Shown here in pieces: positions 2,159 to 64,000 of a stretch of 64,000 nt of DNA. The notes beneath the pieces are model-generated. The model ran no database searches. It was not told the origin of the DNA and saw nothing but the letters and a program-made list of their open reading frames with translations. How positions within the stretch are numbered: the stretch's first letter is position 1; the number at the start of each line of letters is the position of its first letter. Both the position numbers and the translations under genes were made by a program. Origin of the DNA: Octopus sinensis (taxonomy: Eukaryota); contig NC_043003.1 of NCBI RefSeq assembly GCF_006345805.1, positions 84,072,001 through 84,136,000 of the forward strand, given 5' to 3'.

Positions 2159-2588
2159 TTAGGGTTTAGGGTTAAGGTTAGGTTAGGGTTTAGGGTTTAG
2201 GGTTAAGTTTGAAGATAGGGTAGGGTTTAGGATGATTGGGGTTAGGGTTAGGGTTAGGGTTATAGCATAAAAAGGCGGCGAGCTGGCAGAAACGTTAGCA
2301 CGCCGGGCGAAATGCTTAGCAGTATTTCGTCTGCGTTACGTTGTGAGTTCAAATTCCGCCGAGGTCGACTTTGCCTTTCATCCTTTCGGGGTCGATAAAT
2401 TAAGTACCAGTTACGCACTGGGTTCGATGTAATCGACTTAATACCTATGTCTGTCCTTGTTTTTCCCCTCTGTGTTTAGCCCCTTGTGGGTAATAAAGAA
2501 ATAGGTTAGGGTTATAGCATATAGCATTTAGAGTTTAAGATTAGGTTTAGGGTTTAGGTTCAGATTTAGGGTTTACAGTTAAGGTTAG
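2159..2588 (+). repeat. Degenerate interstitial telomere-like (TTAGGG/TTTAGGG) tract, split by a SINE
   Basis: Repeated ttaggg/tttaggg/ttaagg units at 2159-2263 and 2504-2588. Confidence 0.75.
2270..2503 (+). mobile_element. tRNA-derived SINE, family A (tail A1), full length
   Basis: A-box-like ggcgagctggcagaa and B-box-like gagttcaaattcc. 18-bp TSD ggttagggttatagcata at 2252-2269 and 2504-2521. Confidence 0.92.
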
Positions 2589-3285: not shown

Positions 3286-3454
3286 TATTTATGTATTTAT
3301 ATTCCTGAATATGACCTTAAGTTACATCTAGTAGTGAGAGTTCCATGGTTTTGAGGAGAATGTAACCACCTCTTATCCACTATTGGTCCCAGGTCTACTC
3401 TGACCCGGAGTAATAGCACCTGTCAGGTGCTACTATTGCGATGGGTTAAATACC

Positions 3455-3688
3455 TATTTCTTTACTACCCACAAGGGGCTAAACACAGAGGCGGCGAACA
3501 AGGACAGACAAAAGGATTAAGTCGATTATATCGACCCCAGTGCGTAACTGGTACTTAATTTATTGACTCCGGAAGGATGAAAGGCAAAATCGACCTCGGC
3601 GGAATTTGAACTCAGAACGTAACGGCAGACGAAATACCGCTCAGCATTTCGCCCGGCGTGCTAACGATTCTGCCAGCTCGCCGCCCTA
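3455..3688 (-). mobile_element. SINE family A (tail A1), full length
   Basis: Reverse complement of 2270-2503 at roughly 90% identity by eye. 15-bp TSD gatgggttaaatacc at 3440-3454 and 3689-3703. Confidence 0.92.
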
Positions 3689-3874
3689 GATGGGTTAAAT
3701 ACCATGCATGTAACCACTCGATGCAAAGTATGTTGAAATCATGAGATACAGCATGGTGGATGTGAACTGTTTCGGAAGATGAACTTATTAAGTCAATGGT
3801 GAATATTACAAGACGCTGTGCGGATGTAAAGACAACAAACTATCAACAGCCAGGATCAACCACAGCAGTTAGCG

Positions 3875-14890: not shown

Positions 14891-16862
14891 CATCATCAAC
14901 TACGCACACACACATACTAAATAGTAGATTCTTACGACCATAGGGTCTGTGTGGGTAAGATAAAAATGTTGTGTGTTTTTACGAAAACCATATTCACCTT
15001 TGCGGTGAAAAAGTATGTACTGGTGTTAAATCACAGATTTTTTTCTCAATCTCTGTGGCCAGGAAACGAGACCCATCTTACTAGCTTTTGTTAAAGCTTC
15101 GTTGGAAATCAATCACTCAGCCCTGGTAATCCAGAAACTAGTAGTTTATAGCTGTTTATAGTACATTCTTTCTATGTGAATGAACTGGCGTTCCTTAACG
15201 GACCCATAAAAACTTGTGCTATTCCATACATCTACGACATTATGGGTATTTATTATGTAATGTATTATGTAATGAACGTGGTTACAACATAAGCCATTGT
15301 TCACCCGAAACAGCAGTCAAGAAAAGACTATTACATAAGTCCTTTCATTTTTGTATTCTTATTCCGTACTCTGTAATTTGTATTCATTGTGAATATACTT
15401 ACGCTTATTTGTGTTTATTTGCCATTCACACACACACACACACACACAGAGAGAGGCACACACATTTCGGTAATACTATATTGGTTTCATTTGCATAATC
15501 GTGCAAGCATTGGTGAAATGAACGAACTAATACATAGAAGTACTACAGTGATGGGATAAGCAGAAATGTAAGGCAAACAAACGAGCGTGTTATGTTTAAC
15601 AACTGTGTATCTTTGAAAGTTGGCAAAAATCTTGTAGCAAGTTGAAGACTGAAGATCAAAGCAGTATGTAGGAATAAATTATATTTTTACCATGTATGCA
15701 TATCTGCAGTATTATATCAACATTACATTCGGACGTGTGACATCCAATTGTCTACTCATCTGAATAAATAATCATATTAGCCCATGCGTGTTAACAAATA
15801 CAAAATACTATAGAAACAGAATGTGTGTGCGTTAGGATTTTACCCACACTCACACAATAAGACGCGCACACACACACAGAACATACATCTTTTCAGGCTT
15901 GTTTACGAAACCTGCAGCTGCAATCAATAGCTTTTCATTGAAAATTAATTTTATTTATTATTTATCCGAAGTGAATGAATGTGAAAGGAAGATGAGAGAA
16001 AATTTATCAATTTCTCTGCTCACATTTTCTTTCTTTCTTTATGTTTTGCGCTCATAAAACACAATGCATAAAGCAGATGATCAAAAAAGGAATTGTTGAA
16101 AGAACTCAAAGAAATCGATACGAAAGAACGATTTAGTATTACTCTGGAGATATTACTGAGCAAATTCTTAACCACTTCAAACAGAGCCAGCAAAATATAT
16201 TGGATATCATGCAGTTAATATAAACTATCTTGCAGAAGCGAGAGCTTTCAGTAAGCAAGGAGTCAACCTAAGGTTTCGATTCATAGTTGTTTTATTATTT
16301 TATCTCACTTATGTACTTTGTGTTACATCTCTGACTCATATATATATATACAAGCAAACAAGATATCGTACATTCATTATACGATATGACAACATCATAG
16401 TTTATTATATTCATTCAGTTTTTCCTCACGTTGTTTTTGCCTTATTTAACTAATTTAGACCAAATAAGGAGATGCTTGGTAAATTATCTATAGCAAAATC
16501 ATGAGTTGAAATACGAATCAAGACGTTGATGAGAAAATTATATAAAGCTTTTTTTTTTCTTTTTAATTCTTATATCACTATGTCTGTGAAAACGTCTAAC
16601 TATACAACCAAGACAGAAAGCTTTAGAAATAAGCCCAGATGTAACACTGAAACAGGTTAGTCTATATTGTAAGAGGTTGTAATAACATATTTCGAAATGT
16701 CTGTTCAAAAGGTTGTTAAAAAAAAGAGGCGATTATAAAGGAAAAGCATTGAGTTGGTGGGGAAGTGATTCTACATTTATCTTCCATGATAACCTAGGAT
16801 TGCTTTTTCGCTTAAGTGCCGGGAAATGGGGGGAAAATTGTAAGATGAAAACCGAAACATAC

Positions 16863-16967
16863 CGTTATAAGGAAATAGAAATTGATGAAAATAACTTGCA
16901 GGCAGACCAGAATAAATTCTTTAGAACACTTACCTGAAAAAAATAAAAGAGAAAAAAAATCGTTAGT
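16863..16967 (-). other. Putative recursive splice site (AG|GT) with cryptic 71-nt exon
   Basis: actaac (16967-16962)...ttttttttctcttttatttttttcag|gtaagt with the junction at 16934/16933; downstream donor AACG|gtatgt at 16863/16862. Confidence 0.6.
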
Positions 16968-17002
16968 TTTCTTTTTACTTCAAAAACACAAAATTTAATA
17001 AC

Positions 17003-17045
<43 letters not shown>

Positions 17046-17621
17046 GCAACAACAACAACGTTACGTTTACTGAGTTAAATTGAAAACTACAAAGATTACC
17101 ATTTTCCATATTCGTCTTTAGAAATGATATAATTTTCAATAGTCATCAATATTATATTTCGATTGATTTGATCTTTAATGCAGATGTGGTGTTTCGTACC
17201 TACATATGTACATAGTCCCAGGCTGGATTAGAACTACGAACCCTTGTTTCTAAAATAAGGGTAATGACATTCTTGTTCATTGGTATAGGGAACAGTAGTT
17301 TAAAGAAAAAGAGCATTATTACTATCGTTAGTTTTAAAACTCAAGTTCCTAGATCGAGTCCAGCCTTATATGTTTATGTTCAGGAATGAGATAACTGATG
17401 ATGATCAGAGATCAAACCAGCTGTTTTCTGTAACACTGTGGTAGACTACAGAGAATCTCTCTCACCCTCTCTTTTGTCTTTTCATTGGGTGGTGTTTCTC
17501 GGGGCTACACTGTGTTGCTTTGACTATAAATTAAGATTTCTTAGAAACTATATTACTGGCATAACTTTGTTGATACTATGATAGAAAACAAATACCTTTT
17601 CGCTTTTAGTAATTAAATATT

Positions 17622-17661
<40 letters not shown>

Positions 17662-18149
17662 CATATATGTTTTTCCTGGTCCCTTAAAAACTGCATTATA
17701 GTAAAGCTGTGATCAGTCGATCGTTTCATCGAAAGCGCAGCTAAACCGCTGTCTATTCAGTTTTATTTTCTAGGCTTTGATTGAACCAAGGCTATAGTAG
17801 AAGATGACATATGTAGGAAATATGCTCAGAAGGCAAGGAGAAAAACATACTTCTGAAATAATAATATTATTCCTCATCAGAGGCCATTATAAACCTTACA
17901 TGTGTGGAATATTTAGACTGTTCTTTCTCAGATAATAATTTGTCCTCATTGGATTATGGTCATTAATATGATCAAAAATCTCATCAGTGAAACAGTCTAA
18001 CAGTATTATCAAACTTTTAGAATGTCTATAGAGAAGTATATTGGATTTTAGTGAATGAATTTTGAGTGATGTTATAAACTTATAAGAAAACCGGGAGGGG
18101 TCGCTAGTAACAGTAATTTCTAACTTACATGTACAAGTGCATGGTCTGT

Positions 18150-18541
18150 TATATCGACACCAGTATATAACTGATACTTAGTTTATCGACAGTGGGAGGT
18201 TAAAGACAAAATCGACTCTGGCGGGATTTGAACTCAGAGGAAGAATCAACCCTTAGGTCAAAATGCCTTCAGTACTTATTCTATCGGTCTCTTTTGCCGA
18301 ACCGCTAAGTTACGGAGACGTAAACACACCACCATCGGTTGTCAAGCGATGTTGGGGGGACAAACACACACACACATATACACGACAGGATTCTTTCAGT
18401 TTCCGCCTACCAAATCCACTCACAAGGCTTTGGTCGGACCGAGACTATAGACACTTGCTCAAGGTGTCATGCAGTGGGAATGAACCCGGAAGCATGTGGT
18501 TGGTAAGCAAGCCACTTACCACACAGCCACTCCTACGCCTA
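18150..18541 (-). mobile_element. Degraded SINE A fragment (18150-18240) plus SINE family C (18268-18541)
   Basis: C head is the reverse complement of taggcgtaggagtggctgtgtggtaagt, with a CORE-like accttgagcaagtgtc motif and an internal (CA)n. Confidence 0.85.
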
Positions 18542-18944
18542 TGTATATATGTAAATATAGATAAAGACGGAATCTTCACTAGTGTTCCAATTGTACTCAA
18601 CCTATCCCGATCTCTGTATCTCAGGCATTAATCCTTTCAACGTTTTCCTTTTTTTTTTGTATTTTTTTTTTATTAATCTATAGTTTTACCGTTGTATTTG
18701 TTTCGTTAGCCGAAGATTAAATAGGTTTTTTCTCAGAATATAATTGCATTAATCGATTTTTTTGAATAAAAACTATGCACTAAATAGCACTGGCCTTACT
18801 ACTTAATTTATGTAGTAAATAATATAGGTATATCATTTATTAACCTTCTATTAATAGTTTCGATATAATATCATTCAATCCTACGTAGTTGCTCAACCTG
18901 CTTGTAATAACAGTCAAATAAATTTTTTCTTAATAACATTATAC

Positions 18945-19159
18945 CTATTTCTTTACTACCCACAAGGGGCTACACCCAGAGGGGACAAACAAGGACAGAC
19001 AAACGGATTAAGTCGATTGCCTCGACCCCAGTGCATAACTGGTACTTAATTCATCGACCTCAAAAGGATGAAAGGCAAAGTCGACCTCGGCGGAATTTGA
19101 ACTCAGAACGTAGCCGTATTTCGTCCGTGTGCTAACGATTCTGCCAGCTCGCCGTCTTC
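18945..19159 (-). mobile_element. SINE A (tail A1) with short internal deletion
   Basis: 14-bp TSD taataacattatac at 18931-18944 and 19160-19173. Confidence 0.9.
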
Positions 19160-19488
19160 TAATAACATTATACTGCCTTGAAAAACAGGATACATTTGAT
19201 GATATAGCCCAGGGTAGCGTTTCTGTGACGGATGCCAGTTCCATATGCCCTCCTCTCAAAAAGTATTTGTAAAATTTAAGCCCCTCATCCACCTTCATTT
19301 TATCAGTGAGAAGAGAAAATGGAGTTTTACATCCATATAATTCTTCGTTCGTTCGTTCGCCATAGTGCTGGACATGTTTAAACAGTTTAGAGCCATTTTA
19401 ATTTTGTTGAAAACCATTATTTGTCTGCTCATTTTTCAATCCTTGAACGAGCTCTTCACATATGAGAACCTCTGGCTAAAATGTATGA

Positions 19489-19522
<34 letters not shown>

Positions 19523-20158
19523 GAGAGTTACTAGTGAGAGATTATCAATCCGGGCAAATACTTTCTAAGCTCTCTGTTAGTACACCAGGTTAACAATATT
19601 GTTTAGATTAATAAAGAACTCCGTGTATTCTTGTGGCAGGGTCTGAGGTCATAGTTCATCACCATTCTGTATTGTAAAGCCATTGTTGTGTTCCATTTAT
19701 GTGGTTTTTACACAGAGTGATATATAAGACAATACATAAATAATGTTCGTTACATATTTTTCTTCGTTCTAAAATAAAGAAAAAATATCTAATGACAGTT
19801 ATCTATGCCTTAAGTGTGTGTGTGTGTGTGTGTGTGTCCATCCATCCAATCACCCTTACACACAGACATACACACACAACAAAAATATGACATCAGAACA
19901 AGAACTACGTAATTATATTCATTAGGTAAAAGTTGTCACGGCCAAGAGATCCAAACAACACTATTAAATGCCGTCACATACATACGTGCACACAAGTATG
20001 CATGCCTACATACATAAGTCACATACATAAAACATACAAATCTGCATATGCACTGACTCCAAATACATACATACATACATACATACATACATACATACAT
20101 ACATACATACATACATACATACATACATACATACACACATACATACATACATACATAC

Positions 20159-20250
20159 TTTGTCGATGTCGCTGAAATTCTTATGAAGGAGCCTTGGATC
20201 CAAGCTAGAAACCAGCTCTTTCTCTACTGACAAGAAATTTTGAAATAAAA
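20159..20250 (-). CDS. Candidate 92-nt internal exon of an unidentified gene (xLFQNFLSVEKELVSSLDPRLLHKNFSDIDK)
   Basis: gtccttattcag| ... AAA|gtatgt. Phase 1 in, phase 0 out, open frame, protein-like composition; no family recognised. Confidence 0.4.
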
Positions 20251-27240: not shown

Positions 27241-28254
27241 ATATATGTATGTATGTATATATGTATGTATGTATGTATGTATGTAGTATGTTTGTATATG
27301 TATATATGTATGTATATGTATACGTTTGTTCTTTTCTCTTTATTTTTCTCTCTCCTTCTCTATTCTTTCCGAAGGTGAGCGTATGCTCGAAACGTTAGAC
27401 TTCTTTCAATTTTCTTAAGAGTCAATTTAATACATCCTGCTTGTTATTTTACCTTGTCTTCGTATATCTAATTTTATTGTACCATATATATTCATATACA
27501 TAATCATACACATATACGCTCTCCTACTGTAGATGATATAAGGGACACTAATAACTGACTGTCTCTTTATTTTACCGGATTCAGAATGACACAAGACAAT
27601 GTTGACCTACGAAAGCGATATTGATTTTGAGGTCAATGAATGTTGTAAGTATAGAAATTCACTTGCACTGTAACAGACACATGTGGAAAGAGATATAAGT
27701 CTGGAGTTTCTTTGCTTTCTCATTTATGAATCAAACATAATATAACCTCATTGATGTCTTTGGAAATTTTAACGCATCACGAACACGAAAAATAAATAAA
27801 TGTAGACCTTAGCGAGCTTTGAACTTAAAATATAACTGATGCATATTTGTTTTTAGGTCTAGTTATGTGTGCAGGCAAGGTTGTGTCTTTAAGAAGGAAC
27901 ATCCTAAGCGTCTTATACCATAGTCTCGAGTTAACCAATGCCTTGAGTATGAAATAGTGTAGAGGCCCAGCAAAGGGAGTGTTGCTGCCTTCTGATGGTC
28001 GACTCAATTTGTCACTCGGTTTCACAACACCACTGGGTCTTTGGGACCCTTTAGCAGAGTCCATTCTGTTGGAAGCATTAGGGCCAGTTCATCGATCTGA
28101 TGATGGCTGCTTTCCAGCTATACACCAGCCTCGGAGGCTCTGAGAGAGACCATGGTCACTAATGTTTCTCCTCTGAATAAGTTATATTAAATAAAAAAAA
28201 ACAAATGAAAAAATGGAAAAAGTGAAGAAGAAAAGATTCTGGTTGTCACTGCCC

Positions 28255-30489: not shown

Positions 30490-31625
30490 TCAAGTTTCTG
30501 TCTACTAATGGGTCCCATGGACCCATTTTCATTTTTTTTAGTTGTTTTTTTCCTACTGTTTATATTATTTGATTCTGCAGATTTCTCATGACTTATTTTT
30601 TTATTGACTCTCTTATTTATCAAATGGGAAATTTTCTGTATGTTTATAAAATCTAGAAAATTTCACTTTATACATTAATTCCTGTATGGGTCCATTGGAC
30701 CCTCGAATTAAATTTAGACAATACTCTTGTCATTTTAAACAGAATAAAAGCAGTATCAAATATCATTTTCCTAGATATTTATCAGATATAAAATAGATAA
30801 AATTGTATTCAAATTATTAGCTGAATTTTAGATGAAATAGGGAAAATTATGAAAATATTCTTGTGAATTTATGTTATATTGCATCGCCTTCGATCTGCTA
30901 GGTTATAGAGTGATGCAATATTTCTATGTGATGATGCAATTCTTACAATATATTGTATCATCTTTCAGGAGAATATATATATATATATATATATATATGC
31001 CTTTAGTCTGCAATCAAGTTTTATATAGCTCAGTTGTGCTTTCCAGTATGCCTAGACGTAAAAACTTGAGTGAAGACCAAATATCTAAAAGGTTATTAGA
31101 ATTAGATGAAGAATGAGAAGAAGATAGTAGTGATTCCTTCTATTGCTCTGAAGATGATAGTGAAAGTAATTGTGTGCTGGACAGTTTAGGTTCTGTATCA
31201 TCAGAAGATGAAGATACTGAAAAACAATTATCTGCAAGCAACCCAATTATGAATGAGCAATATGTTTCTAGAGACAGACAAGAAGTTTGGCATTCTAATC
31301 CTCTTACTCAAGCAGCAGTAAAAACTTCATCTTGTAATATTGTGCGCCAAGAATGTGGATCATCCCGTTTTGCTAAAAGGTCTTGCGATAGCACTGAAAC
31401 ATGTTTTACTATCTTTATGCACCAGAATTTTCTTGAAGTAATTTGAAAATGGACAAATATTGAAGGTTTACAAAGATAAATGGAAGGAAATTGTGGACTG
31501 ATTCTTATAATTCTTATATATTCTTAGAAACGTGTGTGTGTGTGTGCAGATCCAAACATGAAAATGTCAGACAGTCATGGAGTCAAGAAGATGGCCGCCC
31601 AATATTCAAAAAAATTATGAGCCGG
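30490..31625 (+). mobile_element. piggyBac-like DNA transposon remnant (5' part)
   Basis: Palindromic GGGTC-N5-GACCC motifs at 30510-30524 and 30688-30702 lie upstream of a decayed transposase. No intact TTAA/TIR found. Confidence 0.75.
31048..31625 (+). pseudogene. piggyBac transposase N-terminal pseudogene
   Basis: MPRRKNLSEDQISKRLLELDEE*, acidic tract, YVSRDRQEVWHSNP...NIVRQECG...FTIFMHQNFLEVI*KWTNIEG, then KHENVRQSWSQEDGRPIFKKIMSR, matching piggyBac motifs as I know them. Stops at 31114 and 31444; cut by a SINE at MSR. Confidence 0.85.
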
Positions 31626-31762
31626 GGTACTATTTTATCGACCCCGAAACGATGAAAGGCAAAGTCGACCTCGGCGGAATTTGAACTCAGAACGTAACGG
31701 CAGACGAAATATCGCTAAGCATTTCACCCGACGTGCTAACGATTCTGCCAGCTCACCACTTT
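31623..31762 (-). mobile_element. SINE A, tail missing
   Basis: atcgaccccgaaacgatgaaaggcaaagtcgacctcggcggaatttgaactcagaacgtaacggcagacg. Confidence 0.9.
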
Positions 31763-31828
31763 TAATAATAATAATAATGCACACACAAACACGTATACAA
31801 TACACACACACACACACACACACACAAC

Positions 31829-40759: not shown

Positions 40760-41157
40760 CTTTTCTACTCTAGGCACAAGGCCCGAAATTTTTGGGGAGT
40801 GGGCCAGTCGATTAGATCGACCCCAGTACGCAGCTGGTACTTAATTTATCGACCCTGAAAGGATGAATGGCAAAGTCGACCTCGGCGGAATCTGAACTCA
40901 GAACCTAAAAACAGACGAAATGCCTACTTCTTTATTGCCCACAAGAGGCTAAACATAGAGGGGACAAACAAGGACAGACAAAGGGATTAAATCGATTACA
41001 TCGAACCCAGTGCGTAACTGGTACTTAAGTTATCGACTCCGAAAGGATGAAAGGCAACGTCGACCTCGGCGGAATTTGAACTCAGAACGTAACGGCAGAC
41101 GAAATACGGCTACGCATTTCGCCCGGTGTGCTAACGTTTCTGCCAGCTCGCCTCCTA
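40760..41157 (-). mobile_element. SINE A dimer: full A1 copy (about 40925-41157) joined to a headless A2 copy (about 40760-40924)
   Basis: Two consecutive aaagtcgacctcggcggaat cores; junction cagacgaaatgcc/tacttctttattgcccac. Confidence 0.85.
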
Positions 41158-42497
41158 CTTTCTTCGAATATCTATCGTACTCGGGTCCTTTTACTGGAAT
41201 TCTAAGAGCTCCTTTCATTCAGTACGTGGAGTATAGATTGGTTACATTCTGCTGCTTGTGTCTGGAATATTTTTGTACTATTTATTCTTATACATGTAAT
41301 GTATCTTGCTCATTCCGCTTGAAACTGATGTTTATACAGATTGACAGATCCAGAGATTGATCTCACGCACGATATCTAGAAGTAGGAATGGAGAATTCTG
41401 AGAAGGTTTGCACCAACTACTCTGTGTAGTTGGTGCAAATTCTTGAAAGTGAAACACCGGTAATGTGTCACTCGACAGATTATCAATGATTATGTGAATG
41501 AACTGGTTTATATAGAAAATGTGTTGATTAATATTGCCATTAACCAAGTGGGCGTGTGCTCAATTCCTGGGCTAAGTAATTTATACAAATCTTGGGTATG
41601 AGCAGAACGTTTAATTTTTATTCTATGAAATATATTTGTTTTATTTTATTTTTTATTGATAACCCTCTCTCCATCATCATCATCAGCATCATCTCTCTCT
41701 CTTTCTATTGATATTTCTTTTTTTTTTTTTAAATGTCTGTCATCTTTTTACAAATTTGATACCACTTGAAATATGTTTGACACATATACGAACCTGTAAG
41801 AAAACCATTCACTGTCATGGAGAAATTTTTTCATTGTAGACAAATGGGTATAAACACACCGAGTCAGCTCACAGCATTTCCTAACCAGACTGTTAGATGC
41901 ATGCAATTCGGAGTAGTTAACTCCTGTTCAGAAAAAGAGACTGTAAAGGCAGACGCTGTGAACTGACACGAGAGACAGGTGCTTCTTTTGCTTTTGTCGT
42001 CATCGTCCAATGACTGGTTGCGCTATATAGGAGCTTGCCGTAAGTAAAATACGGGGTAACAGCTCTAAGCAGTGATATGTGTAAAACCAAACTTGTTGCT
42101 AGTTCAAATATGACTGAAGCTTATTCAAACCCACGAGTGAGACATTCACTGTATTTATCATGGAGAAAATTTCTCGCTGTAGACTAATAGATGTAAACAC
42201 ACCGAGTCAGCTCACAGCGACCTTCTGTCTGTCTCCTTTTCTTCCTTCATTCAACATCATTTGGTTACTTGGCCTATTTGTCTACCTCACTCTGCTCCTC
42301 ATCTTCAGACACACATAATCTCTCTCTCTCTTTCTCTGTCTCTCTTTCTCTCTGTGTCTCAGCCTTCATTTCTCTCCACTTTCTGTTAATGACTTTTAAT
42401 TAAATTATGTAAAAATAGCAATGTGCCTCTCGTTTTGACTATACCGAGAAAAGTATCCACTTGATACAACAAACGCCTCCAACCATGATTCACACGC

Positions 42498-43689: not shown

Positions 43690-43910
43690 ATATATATGGG
43701 TTTCAAATTTTGGCACAAGGTCAGCGATTAAGGGAGAGGATTAAGTTGTTTACATCGACCCCAGTGATCAACTGGTACATATTTTATCGACTCCAAAAGG
43801 ATGAAAGACAAAGTAAACCCAGGCGGCATTTGAAGTCAGAACATAAAGACGGTCTAAATGTCGCTAGGCATCATGCTCAACGTGCTAATGATTCTGCCAG
43901 ATCGTCGCTT
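43690..43910 (-). mobile_element. Degraded SINE A
   Basis: caaattttggcacaagg...atcgactccaaaaggatgaaag...gctaatgattctgccag. Confidence 0.8.
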
Positions 43911-44624
43911 TACTCAGTTCATATATATTAATTACGTTATGTTGTGGTTAGTGTATAATACCTAAGATGGGCGAATAGTTAGGGGAATTTTGCTAGTAAT
44001 AGGCTGGCGATACATCCTTTACTGTCAGATATGAACGCCAGAACTAGCCTGACTTAAGTCACCAAATTGCTGAAAGACCTCATACTCCCTTTACGTTTTA
44101 TGCAATGAGGATCGTTTTTAATCGACCCGGAAAAAAGAATTCTTCTTCCTAGTCCAAACGATTTGTCATTAATCACACACGTCTCACAAACAACAACGCC
44201 AACAGGAGTAGCACTCTACCACTATTATTCTCCACCATCGACATCACAAGTAATAGCAGTAACAGTAACAACAGCAACAGCAGTAGTAATATTTTATTAG
44301 ATGAATTAGGCAGGAGCGAAAAACGAATGAGGAACTGTATTCTTTACAACATTACCACATCAACAAGTGACGAATCGTTGTTAATAAGTGTGCTGTTTAA
44401 TATCTCATCCATTACCATATTCATCATCCTTTTTCACCTCATCATCATCATCATCATCATCATCCACATTTCTAATAACAAATTCAACTGCAATAACAAC
44501 GACAGCAAGTTCGTAGTACATCGACGATACACAGAAACTAGGCCATGCCCACAGAGAATTGGACTGTTCAATATACACTAGATGTCACAAAAGACATAAA
44601 CACAAACTCATATGTATATATGCA

Positions 44625-44718: not shown

Positions 44719-44780
<62 letters not shown>

Positions 44781-44781
<1 letters not shown>

Positions 44782-44867
44782 TGGGGATGTTCAAATGTTA
44801 GAAGCATATAGTAGCTTAAATGCCAGATAAGTACGTATGTATGTGTTTGTTGTCGTTATTATTATTA

Positions 44868-44898
<31 letters not shown>

Positions 44899-45057
44899 CA
44901 TTATTATTATATTATTATTACCCAGGGGAAGACCTCCAATGAGATCGTCGGGGGTTAATGTTAGTGCTCAACAGAGAGCCAACACACACACACACACTCC
45001 CTCCCTCTCTCTCTCTTCCTCTCTCTCTCTCTCTTCATCCTCTCTCTTCCTCTCTCT

Positions 45058-45100
<43 letters not shown>

Positions 45101-45888
45101 TAAATGCACTTACACATAAATGCACTTACACACATGGACACATGGACAAACGTGATCGATATCATCGATTCAGTTCATGAATGAGGTACACTCGCTTGAC
45201 GACAGTTTATTGAGTGAAACCAGTAAAAACAAAACATAATATATATATTTATATATATATATATGCATGTATATATATCCGTATCGACAGATAAATTGAT
45301 ATATATATATATATGTAGAGAGAGAGTTTGATTTCTATCAGATAGTGATAGTAATCGGTAATAAAATGAAACTCTATGGCACAGGGTAAAGACACTTGTT
45401 ATATATTGTCTTCTTACAACATGGCCAGATGTAACGACTTTCGTCTCCTCAGAGAAGAATAAGAAATATGTGGCTTCTTGGTTTATATTTATAGTAAATA
45501 TAGACGGGTTTTGTTGTAGGAACAGTGCAGTGGAGACAAATAAATAGTAGCAAATATTATTATATGCGTAAAGAATGTAATGGCAAGAACGATAAGAACA
45601 ATAATAAATATACACATAAAATATGTGTATATGTATGTGTATATGTATGTGTATATGTGTGTATAGTATTTATGGGAGAGAAAGAGAGACAGAGGAGAGG
45701 GGGACCGGAGTGATAAGTTGAAGTAGGCAGCTGAGAAATGATTGAAGAGTAGGAGGAAGAATGGACAGAGCAAGAGAGGGGGAAAGGAGGAAAGGGAGAG
45801 TTATTTTCAATTGACTTTCATTATCAGAAACTTGAAGTGGTATTTCTGAAGTTGTTCACGCCTTCGTCATACATTCCTGTGTATATAA

Positions 45889-45921
<33 letters not shown>

Positions 45922-46023
45922 GTGTGTGTGTGTGTGTTGGGGATGTTCAAATGTTAGAAGCATATAGTAGCTTAAATGCCAGATAAGTACGTATGTATGT
46001 GTTTGTTGTCGTTATTATTATTA

Positions 46024-46057
<34 letters not shown>

Positions 46058-47045
46058 CATTATTATTATATTATTATTACCCAGGGGAAGACCTCCAATG
46101 AGATCGTCGGGGGTTAATGTTAGTGCTCAACAGAGAGCCAACACACACACACACACTCCCTCCCTCTCTCTCTCTTCCTCTCTCTCTCTCTTCATCCTCT
46201 CTCTTCCTCTCTCTCTCTTCCTCTCTCTCTCTCTTCCTCTCTCTCTCTCTCACACATAAATGCACTTACACATAAATGCACTTACACACATGGACACATG
46301 GACAAACGTGATCGATATCATCGATTCAGTTCATGAATGAGGTACACTCGCTTGACGACAGTTTATTGAGTGAAACCAGTAAAAACAAAACATAATATAT
46401 ATATTTATATATATATATATGCATGTATATATATCCGTATCGACAGATAAATTGATATATATATATATATATGTAGAGAGAGAGTTTGATTTCTATCAGA
46501 TAGTGATAGTAATCGGTAATAAAATGAAACTCTATGGCACAGGTAAAGACACTTGTTATATATTGTCTTCTTACAACATGGCCAGATGTAACGACTTTCG
46601 TCTCCTCAGAGAAGAATAAGAAATATGTGGCTTCTTGGTTTATATTTATAGTAAATATAGACGGGTTTTGTTGTAGGAACAGTGCAGTGGAGACAAATAA
46701 ATAGTAGCAAATATTATTATATGCGTAAAGAATGTAATGGCAAGAACGATAAGAACAATAATAAATATACACATAAAATATGTGTATATGTATGTGTATA
46801 TGTATGTGTATATGTGTGTATAGTATTTATGGGAGAGAAAGAGAGACAGAGGAGAGGGGGACCGGAGTGATAAGTTGAAGTAGGCAGCTGAGAAATGATT
46901 GAAGAGTAGGAGGAAGAATGGACAGAGCAAGAGAGGGGGAAAGGAGGAAAGGGAGAGTTATTTTCAATTGACTTTCATTATCAGAAACTTGAAGTGGTAT
47001 TTCTGAAGTTGTTCACGCCTTCGTCATACATTCCTGTGTATATAA

Positions 47046-47047
<2 letters not shown>
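44781..47047. repeat. Direct tandem duplication of about 1.16 kb (44781-45890 and 45937-47047)
   Basis: Offset 1156-1157 bp; copies differ only in microsatellite lengths and a 1-bp indel where I compared them; (TG)n lies at all three junctions. Confidence 0.95.
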
Positions 47048-47082
<35 letters not shown>

Positions 47083-47373
47083 TATGTATGCATGTATGTA
47101 TGTATGTATGTATGTATGTATGTATGTTTGTATGTATGTAGGTAAGTAAGTAGGTAGGTAGGTATGTAGGTATGTATTTATGTATATATGCATGTATGTA
47201 TATGCATATATGTCTACGTATAAACACACACACATATATATACGTACACATTCCCATGTACGTATGTGCACATATATTTATATACATATATATATACACA
47301 TACATATGTATATATATAATGTTATATATATACACACACATTCTTTCGTATGTGTATATATATATGTATGTAT

Positions 47374-61488: not shown

Positions 61489-61944
61489 CATAACAGGCTG
61501 GATATTGCTGTTTGGGACAGTGGGGCAAAGGCATATACCATAATAGAGGCCAGCTGCCCTGCAGACATAAATATCTCGTTGAAAATCAACGAAAACGAAG
61601 ATATATATGGAAAATTGCTTCGAAACCTCCAGCTTCTATATCTAGACTATGAATTTATATACATAACCAGTAATAATTGGAGCGCTAGGTTTTGTTAGTA
61701 AATGCTTAAAGGAGAATCTGGATAAACTGGGATTTTCAGAAAGAGAAACCAACTGGCTAAAGTGTACATTACAAGTGTAAGTACATTACAAATGAGTGGA
61801 ACAGTAAAAATATGTAAGACTTTTCTCAAGTTCTAAATGTGAATTTGTCTGTGTTAACTACATCCCAAAGATGGAGTCTTGTATCTTTGTTGGAGATCGG
61901 CTCCCTCCTCAATGGAAGACTTACAATAGTTTAAAAATAGAAGA
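61489..61944 (+). mobile_element. 5'-truncated R4/Dong-like non-LTR retrotransposon (REL endonuclease C-terminus plus 3' UTR)
   Basis: HNRLDIAVWD...IIEASCPAD.NI..KINE...YGKL...LQLLY...PVIIGALG...LDKLGF...GTVKICKTFLKF* (stop 61834-61836, with frameshifts); PD-(D/E)xK-type layout; flanked by (TACA)n on both sides. Confidence 0.85.
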
Positions 61945-63239: not shown

Positions 63240-63592
63240 TTCTTTATTGCCCACAAGGGGCTAAACATAAAGGGGACAAACAAGGACAGACGAAAGGATG
63301 AAAGGCAAAGTCGACCTCGGCGGAATTTGAACTCAGAACGTAGCGGCAGACAAAATACCTATTTCTTTACAACCCACAAGGGGCTAAACACAGAGGGGAC
63401 AAACAAGGACAGACAAACGGATTAAGACGATTACATCGACCCCAGTGTGTAACTGGTACTTAATTTGTCGACCCAGAAAGGATGAAAGGCAAAGTCGACC
63501 TCGGCGGAATTTGAACTCAGAACGTAACGGCAGACGAAATATCGCTAAGCATTTTGCCCGGGTGCTAACGTTTCTGCCAGCTCGCTGCCTTA
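63240..63592 (-). mobile_element. SINE A dimer: full A1 copy (about 63360-63592) joined to a headless, internally deleted A1 copy
   Basis: Two cores; junction cagacaaaatacc/tatttctttacaacccac. Confidence 0.88.
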
Positions 63593-64000
63593 TAGAGTGT
63601 ATATATTAAAAGGCTTATGATTTTATATAGCTCTGTATTCTAGCATGATAATATATATTATCGACAGCGAATAATTGCAGTAAAGAGTTAAATTTGTAGA
63701 AATATAAATATTTAAAGAATTCCATCATGGAAGAGCCACTTTATCCCGTTTAGTCATCTAAAAACATACAAAAATTGTTTGAATTTTCTTTTGACTTATT
63801 TCTTATATCAAAATATTCACCATTCAAATGCAACATGATCACTGACATTGTTCCGCAGCAGATGGAAATGTGTCAGTGATGAGGTCGCAGAGATGTGACG
63901 AAAATTTTGACACCACAGGGAATAAATGAAAAAAGGAATACAGCATCATTTTTTTAGCATTTTCTTCGGATAGCTAAAAGAATTCATTCATTATGTAATT

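What the first reader, a model, noticed from the sequence alone, without database searches (positions are those of the whole stretch)
16863..16967. Complete recursive-splicing (ratchet) site with a cryptic exon in a putative cephalopod intron
Seen on the minus strand: a consensus branch point ACTAAC about 29 nt upstream, a 23-nt T-rich tract, CAG immediately followed by a perfect GTAAGT donor, and a second donor (AACG|gtatgt) 71 nt downstream. Established: this AG|GT architecture with a short cryptic exon defines recursive splice sites in long Drosophila and vertebrate introns. Inference: it subdivides a long intron of a minus-strand gene. Entered in phase 0, the cryptic exon carries a TAA (a poison exon). 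I am not aware of recursive splicing being described in cephalopods.
Basis: partly seen in the sequence, partly recalled or inferred. Interest (0 to 1): 0.75.

Follow-up and report, generated by a model that had tools for sequence, protein, structure and literature searches.

The report
Recursive-splice-like motif in octopus DNA
The sequence really does contain a textbook-looking "recursive splice site" on the minus strand of what is almost certainly octopus DNA. Nothing available here shows that this strand is transcribed or lies in an intron, so it is an untested motif match, about as likely chance as real.

Summary
ACTAAC lies at 16967-16962. A 23-nt tract with 20 T runs from 16959 to 16937. 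CAG|GTAAGT sits at 16934|16933. A second donor, ACG|GTATGT, follows 71 nt downstream, and a TAA falls in phase 0.

It is the only site of this quality in the window and it is not part of any repeat found within the window. The core motif is expected about 0.005-0.05 times per 64-kb window. That means hundreds to about 2,000 chance copies in a genome of roughly 2.7 Gb. A nearly as strong core on the opposite strand (27375) shows that chance look-alikes do occur here.

The "upstream donor" at 20159/20158 is the first unit of a (GTAT)24 microsatellite. No exon was detected on either strand, and there is no strand skew around the site. No orthologous sequence and no RNA data could be reached. Transposon fragments place the window in Octopus.

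My estimates: chance pseudo-site about 0.5, genuine recursive site about 0.3, ordinary or cryptic exon about 0.12. If real, it would be a new member of a known kind, in a new phylum.

The parts
16962..16967 (-). Branch-point-like ACTAAC, with the presumptive branch A at 16963
   Evidence: Read directly. It lies 29 nt upstream of the AG. An exact ACTAAC falls within -50 to -18 of only 0.6% of random positions, but looser branch motifs are common: CTRAY 9%, yTnAy 44%.
16937..16959 (-). Polypyrimidine tract of 23 nt (20 T, 2 C, 1 A)
   Evidence: In the 20-nt scoring window upstream of the acceptor, 19 of 20 bases are pyrimidines. Only about 1% of 20-nt windows in this sequence reach that level. 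The tract contains no AG.
16928..16936 (-). Juxtaposed acceptor and donor CAG|GTAAGT, with the junction at 16934|16933
   Evidence: This is the only pyrimidine-tract AG|GTAAGT in the window on either strand. It has the maximum donor score of 12.7 bits, using an approximate weight matrix written from memory.
16863..16933 (-). Putative 71-nt cryptic exon, not a multiple of 3 in length, with stops in 2 of 3 frames
   Evidence: GC content is 31%, the same as the surrounding 1.1 kb. The plus-strand ORF that overlaps it had no homolog in a full HMMER search.
16865..16867 (-). TAA stop codon in phase 0 of the putative exon
16857..16862 (-). Second donor ACG|GTATGT, the candidate donor of the cryptic exon
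   Evidence: It scores 7.5 bits, in the top 1.5% of GT sites in the window, and is weaker than the first donor. It is the best GT within 240 nt downstream. GTATGT is very common in this window, with 375 copies that are mostly microsatellite. This copy is not inside an array.
16996..17045 (.). (TAA/ATT)16 microsatellite immediately upstream in the minus sense. It is AT-rich, low-complexity context for the T tract.

Best explanation
This is a sequence-perfect look-alike of a recursive splice site. It sits in AT-rich, microsatellite- and SINE-laden octopus DNA in which no exon was detected.

The single most likely reading is a fortuitous composite that is not used. A T-rich low-complexity tract lies next to an (ATT)n microsatellite and happens to end in CAG|GTAAGT. 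One of the many GTATGT hexamers of this genome lies 71 nt downstream.

Shown: the motif exists, it is rare for one window, and it is not part of a repeat found within the window.

Inferred: chance alone supplies hundreds or more such cores in a genome of this size, and nothing here puts the site in a sense-strand intron.

If the minus strand were transcribed through the site, the elements present would very probably be recognised by exon definition. The stronger regenerated donor would then remove the 71-nt exon, which is recursive behaviour.
For: - The expected number of chance cores is 0.005-0.05 per 64-kb window. Assuming a genome of about 2.7 Gb (from memory), that is about 200-2,000 per genome.
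- The opposite strand carries a core of nearly equal strength at 27375: 18 of 20 pyrimidines, then AAG|GTGAGC, with an intronic donor part of 8.45 bits against 8.7. Relaxed criteria give 3 sites on the plus strand and 1 on the minus strand. Look-alikes therefore occur here without any preference for the minus strand.
- No exon was detected. Pfam found no family at E <= 0.01 in any minus-strand ORF of 30 aa or more that passed a low-complexity filter, nor in the repeat- and complexity-filtered plus-strand ORFs of 40 aa or more.
- A full HMMER search of 1.84 billion representative proteins found nothing for the ORFs beside the site or for those at 20.2-21.1 kb. In the same job it did find the transposon-derived ORFs, which served as a positive control.
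- The claimed upstream donor is the edge of a microsatellite.
- After masking, strand skews over 14-20 kb are GC +0.002 and TA -0.006.
- In mouse, about 20 of 4.77 million sense-strand AGGT sites are accepted recursive sites, so a motif alone predicts little in a large genome (PMC8797253).
Against: The complete composite is much rarer than the core. Multiplying core (about 0.02) by downstream donor (0.10) by CTRAY-class branch motif (0.09) gives about 2e-4 per window, or roughly 10 per genome, if the features are independent.

If octopus used recursive splicing as densely as Drosophila does, real sites would outnumber chance composites. In flies most introns over 40 kb have a site (PMC6110457).

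A 64-kb stretch without exons is also what the inside of a giant intron looks like.

Exon detection was weak. It relied on Pfam and on a limited set of ORFs. The three word-index homology searches proved to be unreliable negatives.
Confidence: 0.5

Rival explanations
1. This is a genuine intronic recursive splice site (ratchet point) in a very long intron of a minus-strand octopus gene. The acceptor at 16934 is joined to the upstream exon, with the 71-nt cryptic exon defined by the donor at 16863|16862. The regenerated GTAAGT donor at 16933 then outcompetes the weaker GTATGT donor. The cryptic exon is removed together with the rest of the intron and never appears in mRNA.
For: Every cis feature that defines the class is present, at consensus strength and in the right geometry.
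- The first donor is stronger than the exon's own donor (12.7 or 8.7 bits against 7.5). The competition model predicts skipping in that case (PMC8605326).
- The exon is out of frame and carries stops.
- This is the best such site in the window, and the full composite is expected only about 2e-4 times per window by chance.
- The site is unique sequence, not a SINE or other repeat found within the window.
- The absence of exons across 64 kb is compatible with a giant intron, which is where such sites occur (PMC6110457, PMC8797253).
Against: There is no evidence of a minus-strand gene, of transcription or of conservation. The proposed upstream exon and donor are a microsatellite edge. There is no local strand asymmetry. 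A near-equivalent core lies on the other strand. Whether cephalopods use recursive splicing at all is unknown. In mammals very few motif matches are accepted sites.
Confidence: 0.3
2. This is an ordinary exon that happens to begin with GTAAGT: an unannotated cassette or poison exon, a UTR exon or a lncRNA exon spanning 16933-16863. It would be spliced in conventionally at least some of the time. This corresponds to the vertebrate-style expressed RS-exon or the 'RS-like cryptic exon'.
For: It has a complete acceptor (branch motif, pyrimidine tract, first AG) and a usable donor 71 nt downstream. Mouse data show that many AGGT candidates turn out to be unannotated exons: 46 of 84 (PMC8797253). 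Frame 3 of the exon is open.
Against: The exon has the same 31% GC as its flanks, and its translation looks like random AT-rich sequence. Its Pfam search found nothing. The first donor is stronger than the exon's own donor, which argues for skipping rather than inclusion. As with the other readings, there is no sign of transcription.
Confidence: 0.12
3. The site is a by-product of a mobile element. The T tract would be the antisense of an A-rich/(AAT)n retroposon tail on the plus strand, as in antisense-Alu exonisation. The motif would then recur in many genomic copies.
For: On the plus strand the site reads as an A-rich stretch followed directly by (TAA)16. That arrangement resembles the 3' tail of a retroposon. 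The window is about 19% interspersed repeat by self-comparison.
Against: The segment 16400-17500 has no second copy in the window. ORFs around it found no homolog, while recognised transposon fragments did. Genome-wide copy number could not be measured.
Confidence: 0.05

Closest known systems
Drosophila intronic ratchet points with cryptic RS-exons (for example Ubx, kuz, Bx; Burnette 2005, Duff 2015 and Joseph 2018, as summarised in PMC8605326)
   Same: - Pyrimidine tract followed by CAG|GTAAGT.
- A short cryptic exon, 71 nt here against about 50 nt in flies.
- The cryptic exon is out of frame and carries stops.
- The downstream donor is weaker than the regenerated donor.
   Different: Fly sites are defined by saw-tooth RNA profiles, junction and lariat reads, ultraconservation of the acceptor-donor motif, and a position in the sense strand of introns tens of kb long. 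None of these could be shown here, and the organism belongs to another phylum.
Vertebrate recursive splice sites and RS-exons in long neuronal genes (for example Hs6st3 and Lsamp in mouse, PMC8797253; Sibley 2015)
   Same: The AGGTAAGT core is enriched, the 20 nt upstream are pyrimidine-rich, and exon definition works through a downstream donor. The genome is large, so most motif matches are not functional.
   Different: Accepted vertebrate sites lie in introns over 51 kb within genes over 294 kb, are conserved and show junction reads. The host gene is unknown here.
Pseudo-exons or decoy splice sites in long introns and intergenic DNA
   Same: Strong splice-site-like motifs arise by chance in AT-rich, low-complexity sequence. 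A comparable core is present on the opposite strand (27375).
   Different: This composite is unusually complete. It has a yeast-grade branch motif, a perfect U1 match and a partner donor at exon-like distance.

Membership tests
Intronic recursive splice site (ratchet point) | [quoted passage not shown] | tested here: met
   The sequence is TTTTTTTCAG|GTAAGT, with 19 of 20 pyrimidines upstream. It has the top donor score in the window and is the only such site.
Intronic recursive splice site (ratchet point) | A downstream 5' splice site that defines a short cryptic RS-exon | tested here: met
   ACG|GTATGT lies at +71 and scores 7.5 bits, in the top 1.5% of GT sites. A donor of this quality lies within +30 to +150 of 10% of random positions.
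Intronic recursive splice site (ratchet point) | The regenerated donor is stronger than the RS-exon donor, so the exon is skipped | tested here: inconclusive
   The intronic part scores 8.7 bits, against 7.5 bits for the whole second donor. The true strength depends on the last 3 nt of an unknown upstream exon. The weight matrix is an approximation written from memory.
Intronic recursive splice site (ratchet point) | The cryptic exon is out of frame or carries a premature stop | tested here: met
   The exon is 71 nt long. There is a TAA in frame 1, two stops in frame 2, and frame 3 is open.
Intronic recursive splice site (ratchet point) | Located on the sense strand of a long intron (tens of kb) of an expressed gene | tested here: inconclusive
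   No exon was found on either strand. The claimed upstream donor is a microsatellite edge. There is no strand skew. No annotation could be reached.
Intronic recursive splice site (ratchet point) | Evolutionary conservation focused on the acceptor|donor motif | not testable with these tools
   The only possibly orthologous contig, L001, ends about 900 nt short of the site. An exact scan of the metagenome collection found nothing.
Intronic recursive splice site (ratchet point) | RNA evidence: saw-tooth profile, reads joining the upstream exon to the site, and recursive lariats | not testable with these tools
   No read-level RNA data are available here.
Conventional coding cassette exon | Frame-preserving length and coding signal or homology | tested here: not met
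   71 is not a multiple of 3. GC content equals that of the flanks. Pfam found nothing for the ORF that reads through it. The 23 codons are too short for a homology test of their own.

The most novel reading that the evidence does not exclude
Octopus removes its giant introns stepwise, and 16934|16933 is a true ratchet point with a 71-nt cryptic poison exon. It would be the first recursive splice site documented outside insects and vertebrates. That would point to a mechanism inherited from the bilaterian ancestor, or one that evolves wherever introns grow very long.
Probability: 0.3. Interest if true: 0.5.

Novelty: new member of a known kind. Interest (0 to 1): 0.25.

Why it matters
Recursive splicing is documented in flies and vertebrates. 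The held library has no paper that treats it in any mollusc.

From memory, cephalopods have very large, repeat-rich genomes with long neuronal genes. They are therefore a natural place to ask whether stepwise intron removal is ancestral or convergent.

One validated site would justify a genome-wide survey. As it stands, a single motif match adds no evidence beyond showing that the motif can be found. A specialist would expect such matches in any genome of this size.

Tried and rejected
1. Three word-index homology searches used concatenated ORFs: the 15.8-21.1 kb region on both strands, unique minus-strand ORFs, and unique plus-strand ORFs. All were empty. A later search showed that the plus-strand query contained an ORF 83% identical to an O. 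vulgaris protein, which one search missed. I therefore discard all three negatives.
3. Exact look-ups of three window ORFs in the assembly collection found nothing on record.
4. An exact 28-mer spanning the site was scanned against the metagenome collection, with no match.
5. Rfam and tRNA scans of the window found nothing.
6. Pfam gave a weak Piezo_TM1-24 hit (E 0.0016, 17 bits) to the ORF upstream of the claimed donor. I reject it. The matched residues translate a degenerate GT/GTAT repeat, the hit disappears at E <= 0.01, and the part of that ORF searched found no Piezo.
7. The O. vulgaris locus of the best piggyBac hit (L002) was tested for synteny. It shares only transposon pieces with the window, so it is a paralog.
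8. Strand-composition asymmetry was tested as a proxy for transcription direction. The raw profile suggested a sign change near 25 kb. After masking tandem and interspersed repeats, the region around the site shows no skew, and the rest is weak and inconsistent.
9. Flanking inverted or direct repeats that would mark a transposon around the site were sought, and none was convincing.
11. Three key papers (Burnette 2005, Duff 2015, Sibley 2015) are not held.
12. The run accession of L001 was not found in any held paper.

Full report
**The observation**

On the minus strand the window reads aaaACTAACgaTTTTTTTTCTCTTTTATTTTTTTCAG|GTAAGTgttc...ttataACG|GTATGTttc. The coordinates match the finding.
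- ACTAAC occupies 16967-16962.
- A 23-nt tract of 20 T, 2 C and 1 A occupies 16959-16937.
- CAG occupies 16936-16934 and GTAAGT 16933-16928.
- The second donor lies at 16863|16862.
- There is no AG between the branch motif and the acceptor.
- The putative exon is 71 nt long. It ends in TAA in frame 1, has two stops in frame 2 and is open in frame 3.

**Is it more than chance?**

Within the window the site is exceptional.
- Of 347 AGGT sites on both strands, three have at least 17 of 20 pyrimidines upstream, and only this one has a consensus donor.
- CAGGTAAGT is the top score among 8,236 GT sites. The weight matrix used is an approximation written from memory.
- Dinucleotide shuffles never reproduce YYYYYYYYAGGTAAGT (0 of 100). 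Shuffling destroys the natural pyrimidine runs, however, so this understates the expectation.
- Markov order-3 and order-5 simulations give 0.005-0.025 cores per window.
- Multiplying the frequency of AGGTAAGT by the measured fraction of pyrimidine-rich 20-mers gives 0.02-0.05. That fraction is 2.5% at 17 or more pyrimidines and 1% at 19 or more.

One window is therefore mildly surprising. A genome of about 2.7 Gb (octopus size, from memory) would carry roughly 200-2,000 such cores by chance.

The added features are weaker evidence. A donor as good as the second one lies at exon-like distance from 10% of random positions. A CTRAY branch motif is suitably placed at 9% of positions.

If the features are independent, the full composite is expected about 2e-4 times per window, or roughly ten times per genome. 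This figure is inflated in significance, because the features were chosen after they had been seen.

The window contains its own control. On the plus strand at 27375 a 45-nt pyrimidine run ends in AAG|GTGAGC, with 18 of 20 pyrimidines and an intronic donor part of 8.45 bits against 8.7. It lacks a partner donor. With relaxed thresholds, three of the four look-alikes are on the plus strand.

**Context: organism and repeats**

The window has 37.6% GC. TRF marks 19% of it as tandem repeat, and self-comparison finds another 19% interspersed repeat. This includes many copies of a tRNA-like SINE.

A full HMMER search of 1.84 billion representative proteins used eleven concatenated ORFs. The ORF at 31048-31401(+) is 73-85% identical to Octopus vulgaris proteins, one of them named as piggyBac-derived. 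The ORF at 61492-61854(+) matches many retroelement-like proteins.

The 1.1 kb around the site has no second copy in the window.

**Context: is there a gene?**

The same search found nothing for the two ORFs flanking the site or for six ORFs at 20.2-21.1 kb. One gap remains: the last 50 residues of the ORF that abuts the claimed donor were not included in that job.

Pfam found no family at E <= 0.01 in any minus-strand ORF of 30 aa or more that passed a low-complexity filter, nor in the repeat- and complexity-filtered plus-strand ORFs of 40 aa or more.

My three earlier word-index searches must be disregarded. They missed the 83%-identical octopus protein.

It is the first unit of a (GTAT)24 array at 20063-20158.

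After masking, base skews over 14-20 kb are zero.

I could reach no annotation. The O. vulgaris locus of the best hit is a paralogous transposon copy.

A 1,039-nt Logan contig (L001) is colinear with 19457-17919 at 76-83% identity. The window carries two insertions relative to it. The contig stops about 900 nt short of the site, so conservation could not be tested.

**What it most likely is**

Published work defines a recursive site by four things: the juxtaposed motif; a short, poorly conserved, usually out-of-frame cryptic exon with a weaker donor; ultraconservation of the acceptor-donor motif; and RNA intermediates in long sense-strand introns (PMC8605326; PMC6110457; PMC8797253). The sequence-level criteria are met here. 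The rest are untested.

How predictive a motif is depends on the lineage. In flies most introns over 40 kb carry a site. In mouse about 20 of 4.77 million sense-strand AGGT sites qualify.

The following weighting is inference.
- If octopus is fly-like, real high-quality sites would outnumber chance composites, and this site would probably be real.
- If octopus is mouse-like, the site is probably chance.
- An exon-free 64-kb window is either intergenic, which is the larger share of the genome, or the inside of a giant intron.

I put a fortuitous, unused composite at about 0.5. I put a genuine recursive site at about 0.3, an ordinary or cryptic exon beginning with GTAAGT at about 0.12, and a transposon by-product or other origin at about 0.05.

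If the minus strand is transcribed, the mechanism follows directly. Exon definition would act across 16933-16863, the upstream exon would be ligated to 16933, and the regenerated GTAAGT would be used in preference to GTATGT. The 71-nt exon would then be removed.

**Novelty**

The held library has no paper on recursive splicing in cephalopods or molluscs. A validated site would be a new member of a known kind, in a new phylum. That is interesting but not surprising, because the mechanism is already regarded as unified across metazoans.

As a single unvalidated motif match the finding deserves a low score. The decisive tests are ordinary ones: mapping to an annotated assembly, nuclear RNA-seq, a multi-species alignment, and a genome-wide sense-versus-antisense count.

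Noticed in passing
window 27330-27380 (+): A second recursive-site-like core lies on the opposite strand. A pyrimidine run of about 45 nt ends in AAG|GTGAGC (18 of 20 pyrimidines). No good donor follows within 150 nt. It serves as an internal example of a chance look-alike.
   Followed up: partly
window 2271-2515(-), 3420-3700, 18900-19180, 31560-31778, 40890-41170, 43690-43931, 63320-63609 (+), and more: A SINE family of about 230 nt is abundant. Individual stretches have up to 18 matches elsewhere in the window. Its head, read as the reverse complement of the aligned strand, is tRNA-like (AAGGCGGCGAGCTGGCAGAA...). ARAGORN and Rfam call nothing. From memory it resembles the common octopus tRNA-derived SINE.
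   Followed up: partly
window 30499-31627 (+): A piggyBac-type transposase N-terminal fragment is interrupted by a stop. It is 84.5% identical in DNA to a copy on O. vulgaris OX597817.1, and 73-85% identical in protein to several O. vulgaris 'hypothetical predicted proteins'.
   Followed up: yes
window 61492-61854 (+): A fragment of a retroelement-like ORF has dozens of homologs in the representative library (E down to 4e-13). Pfam finds no domain.
   Followed up: partly
window 44755-45934 and 45910-47090: A tandem duplication of a unit of about 1.16 kb, with copies 98.65% identical. Each copy carries (ATT)n, (CT)n and (GT)n arrays.
   Followed up: partly
L001 1-1039 vs window 17919-19457 (-): A Logan contig from run SRR11869391 is colinear with the window at 76-83% identity. 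It lacks two window segments: the SINE at 18939-19159 and the stretch 18131-18522. It is either an ortholog from another octopod that predates these insertions, or a diverged larger repeat. I could not tell which.
   Followed up: partly
P0041 / L001 61-420: The protein collection holds prokaryote-style gene calls made on octopus-like contigs with TGA read as Trp (genetic code 4). The product of P0041 spans three in-frame TGA codons. Such entries are artefactual ORFs, not proteins.
   Followed up: yes
method (versus 62): The word-index homology search returned nothing for long concatenated queries, even though one query contained an ORF 83% identical to a protein in the database. Negatives from such queries are not informative.
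   Followed up: yes
window 1-24000 versus 26000-64000: GC skew changes sign near 24-26 kb (masked values: -0.032 before, +0.050 after). There is no matching change in TA skew. It may reflect repeat composition, a replication-related switch or a transcription-related switch.
   Followed up: partly
window 17220-17263 / 17323-17366: An imperfect 44-nt inverted repeat (70% complementary) with arms 59 nt apart, ending in ...AGGCTGG / CCAGCCT. It could be a small hairpin element or a MITE remnant.
   Followed up: no
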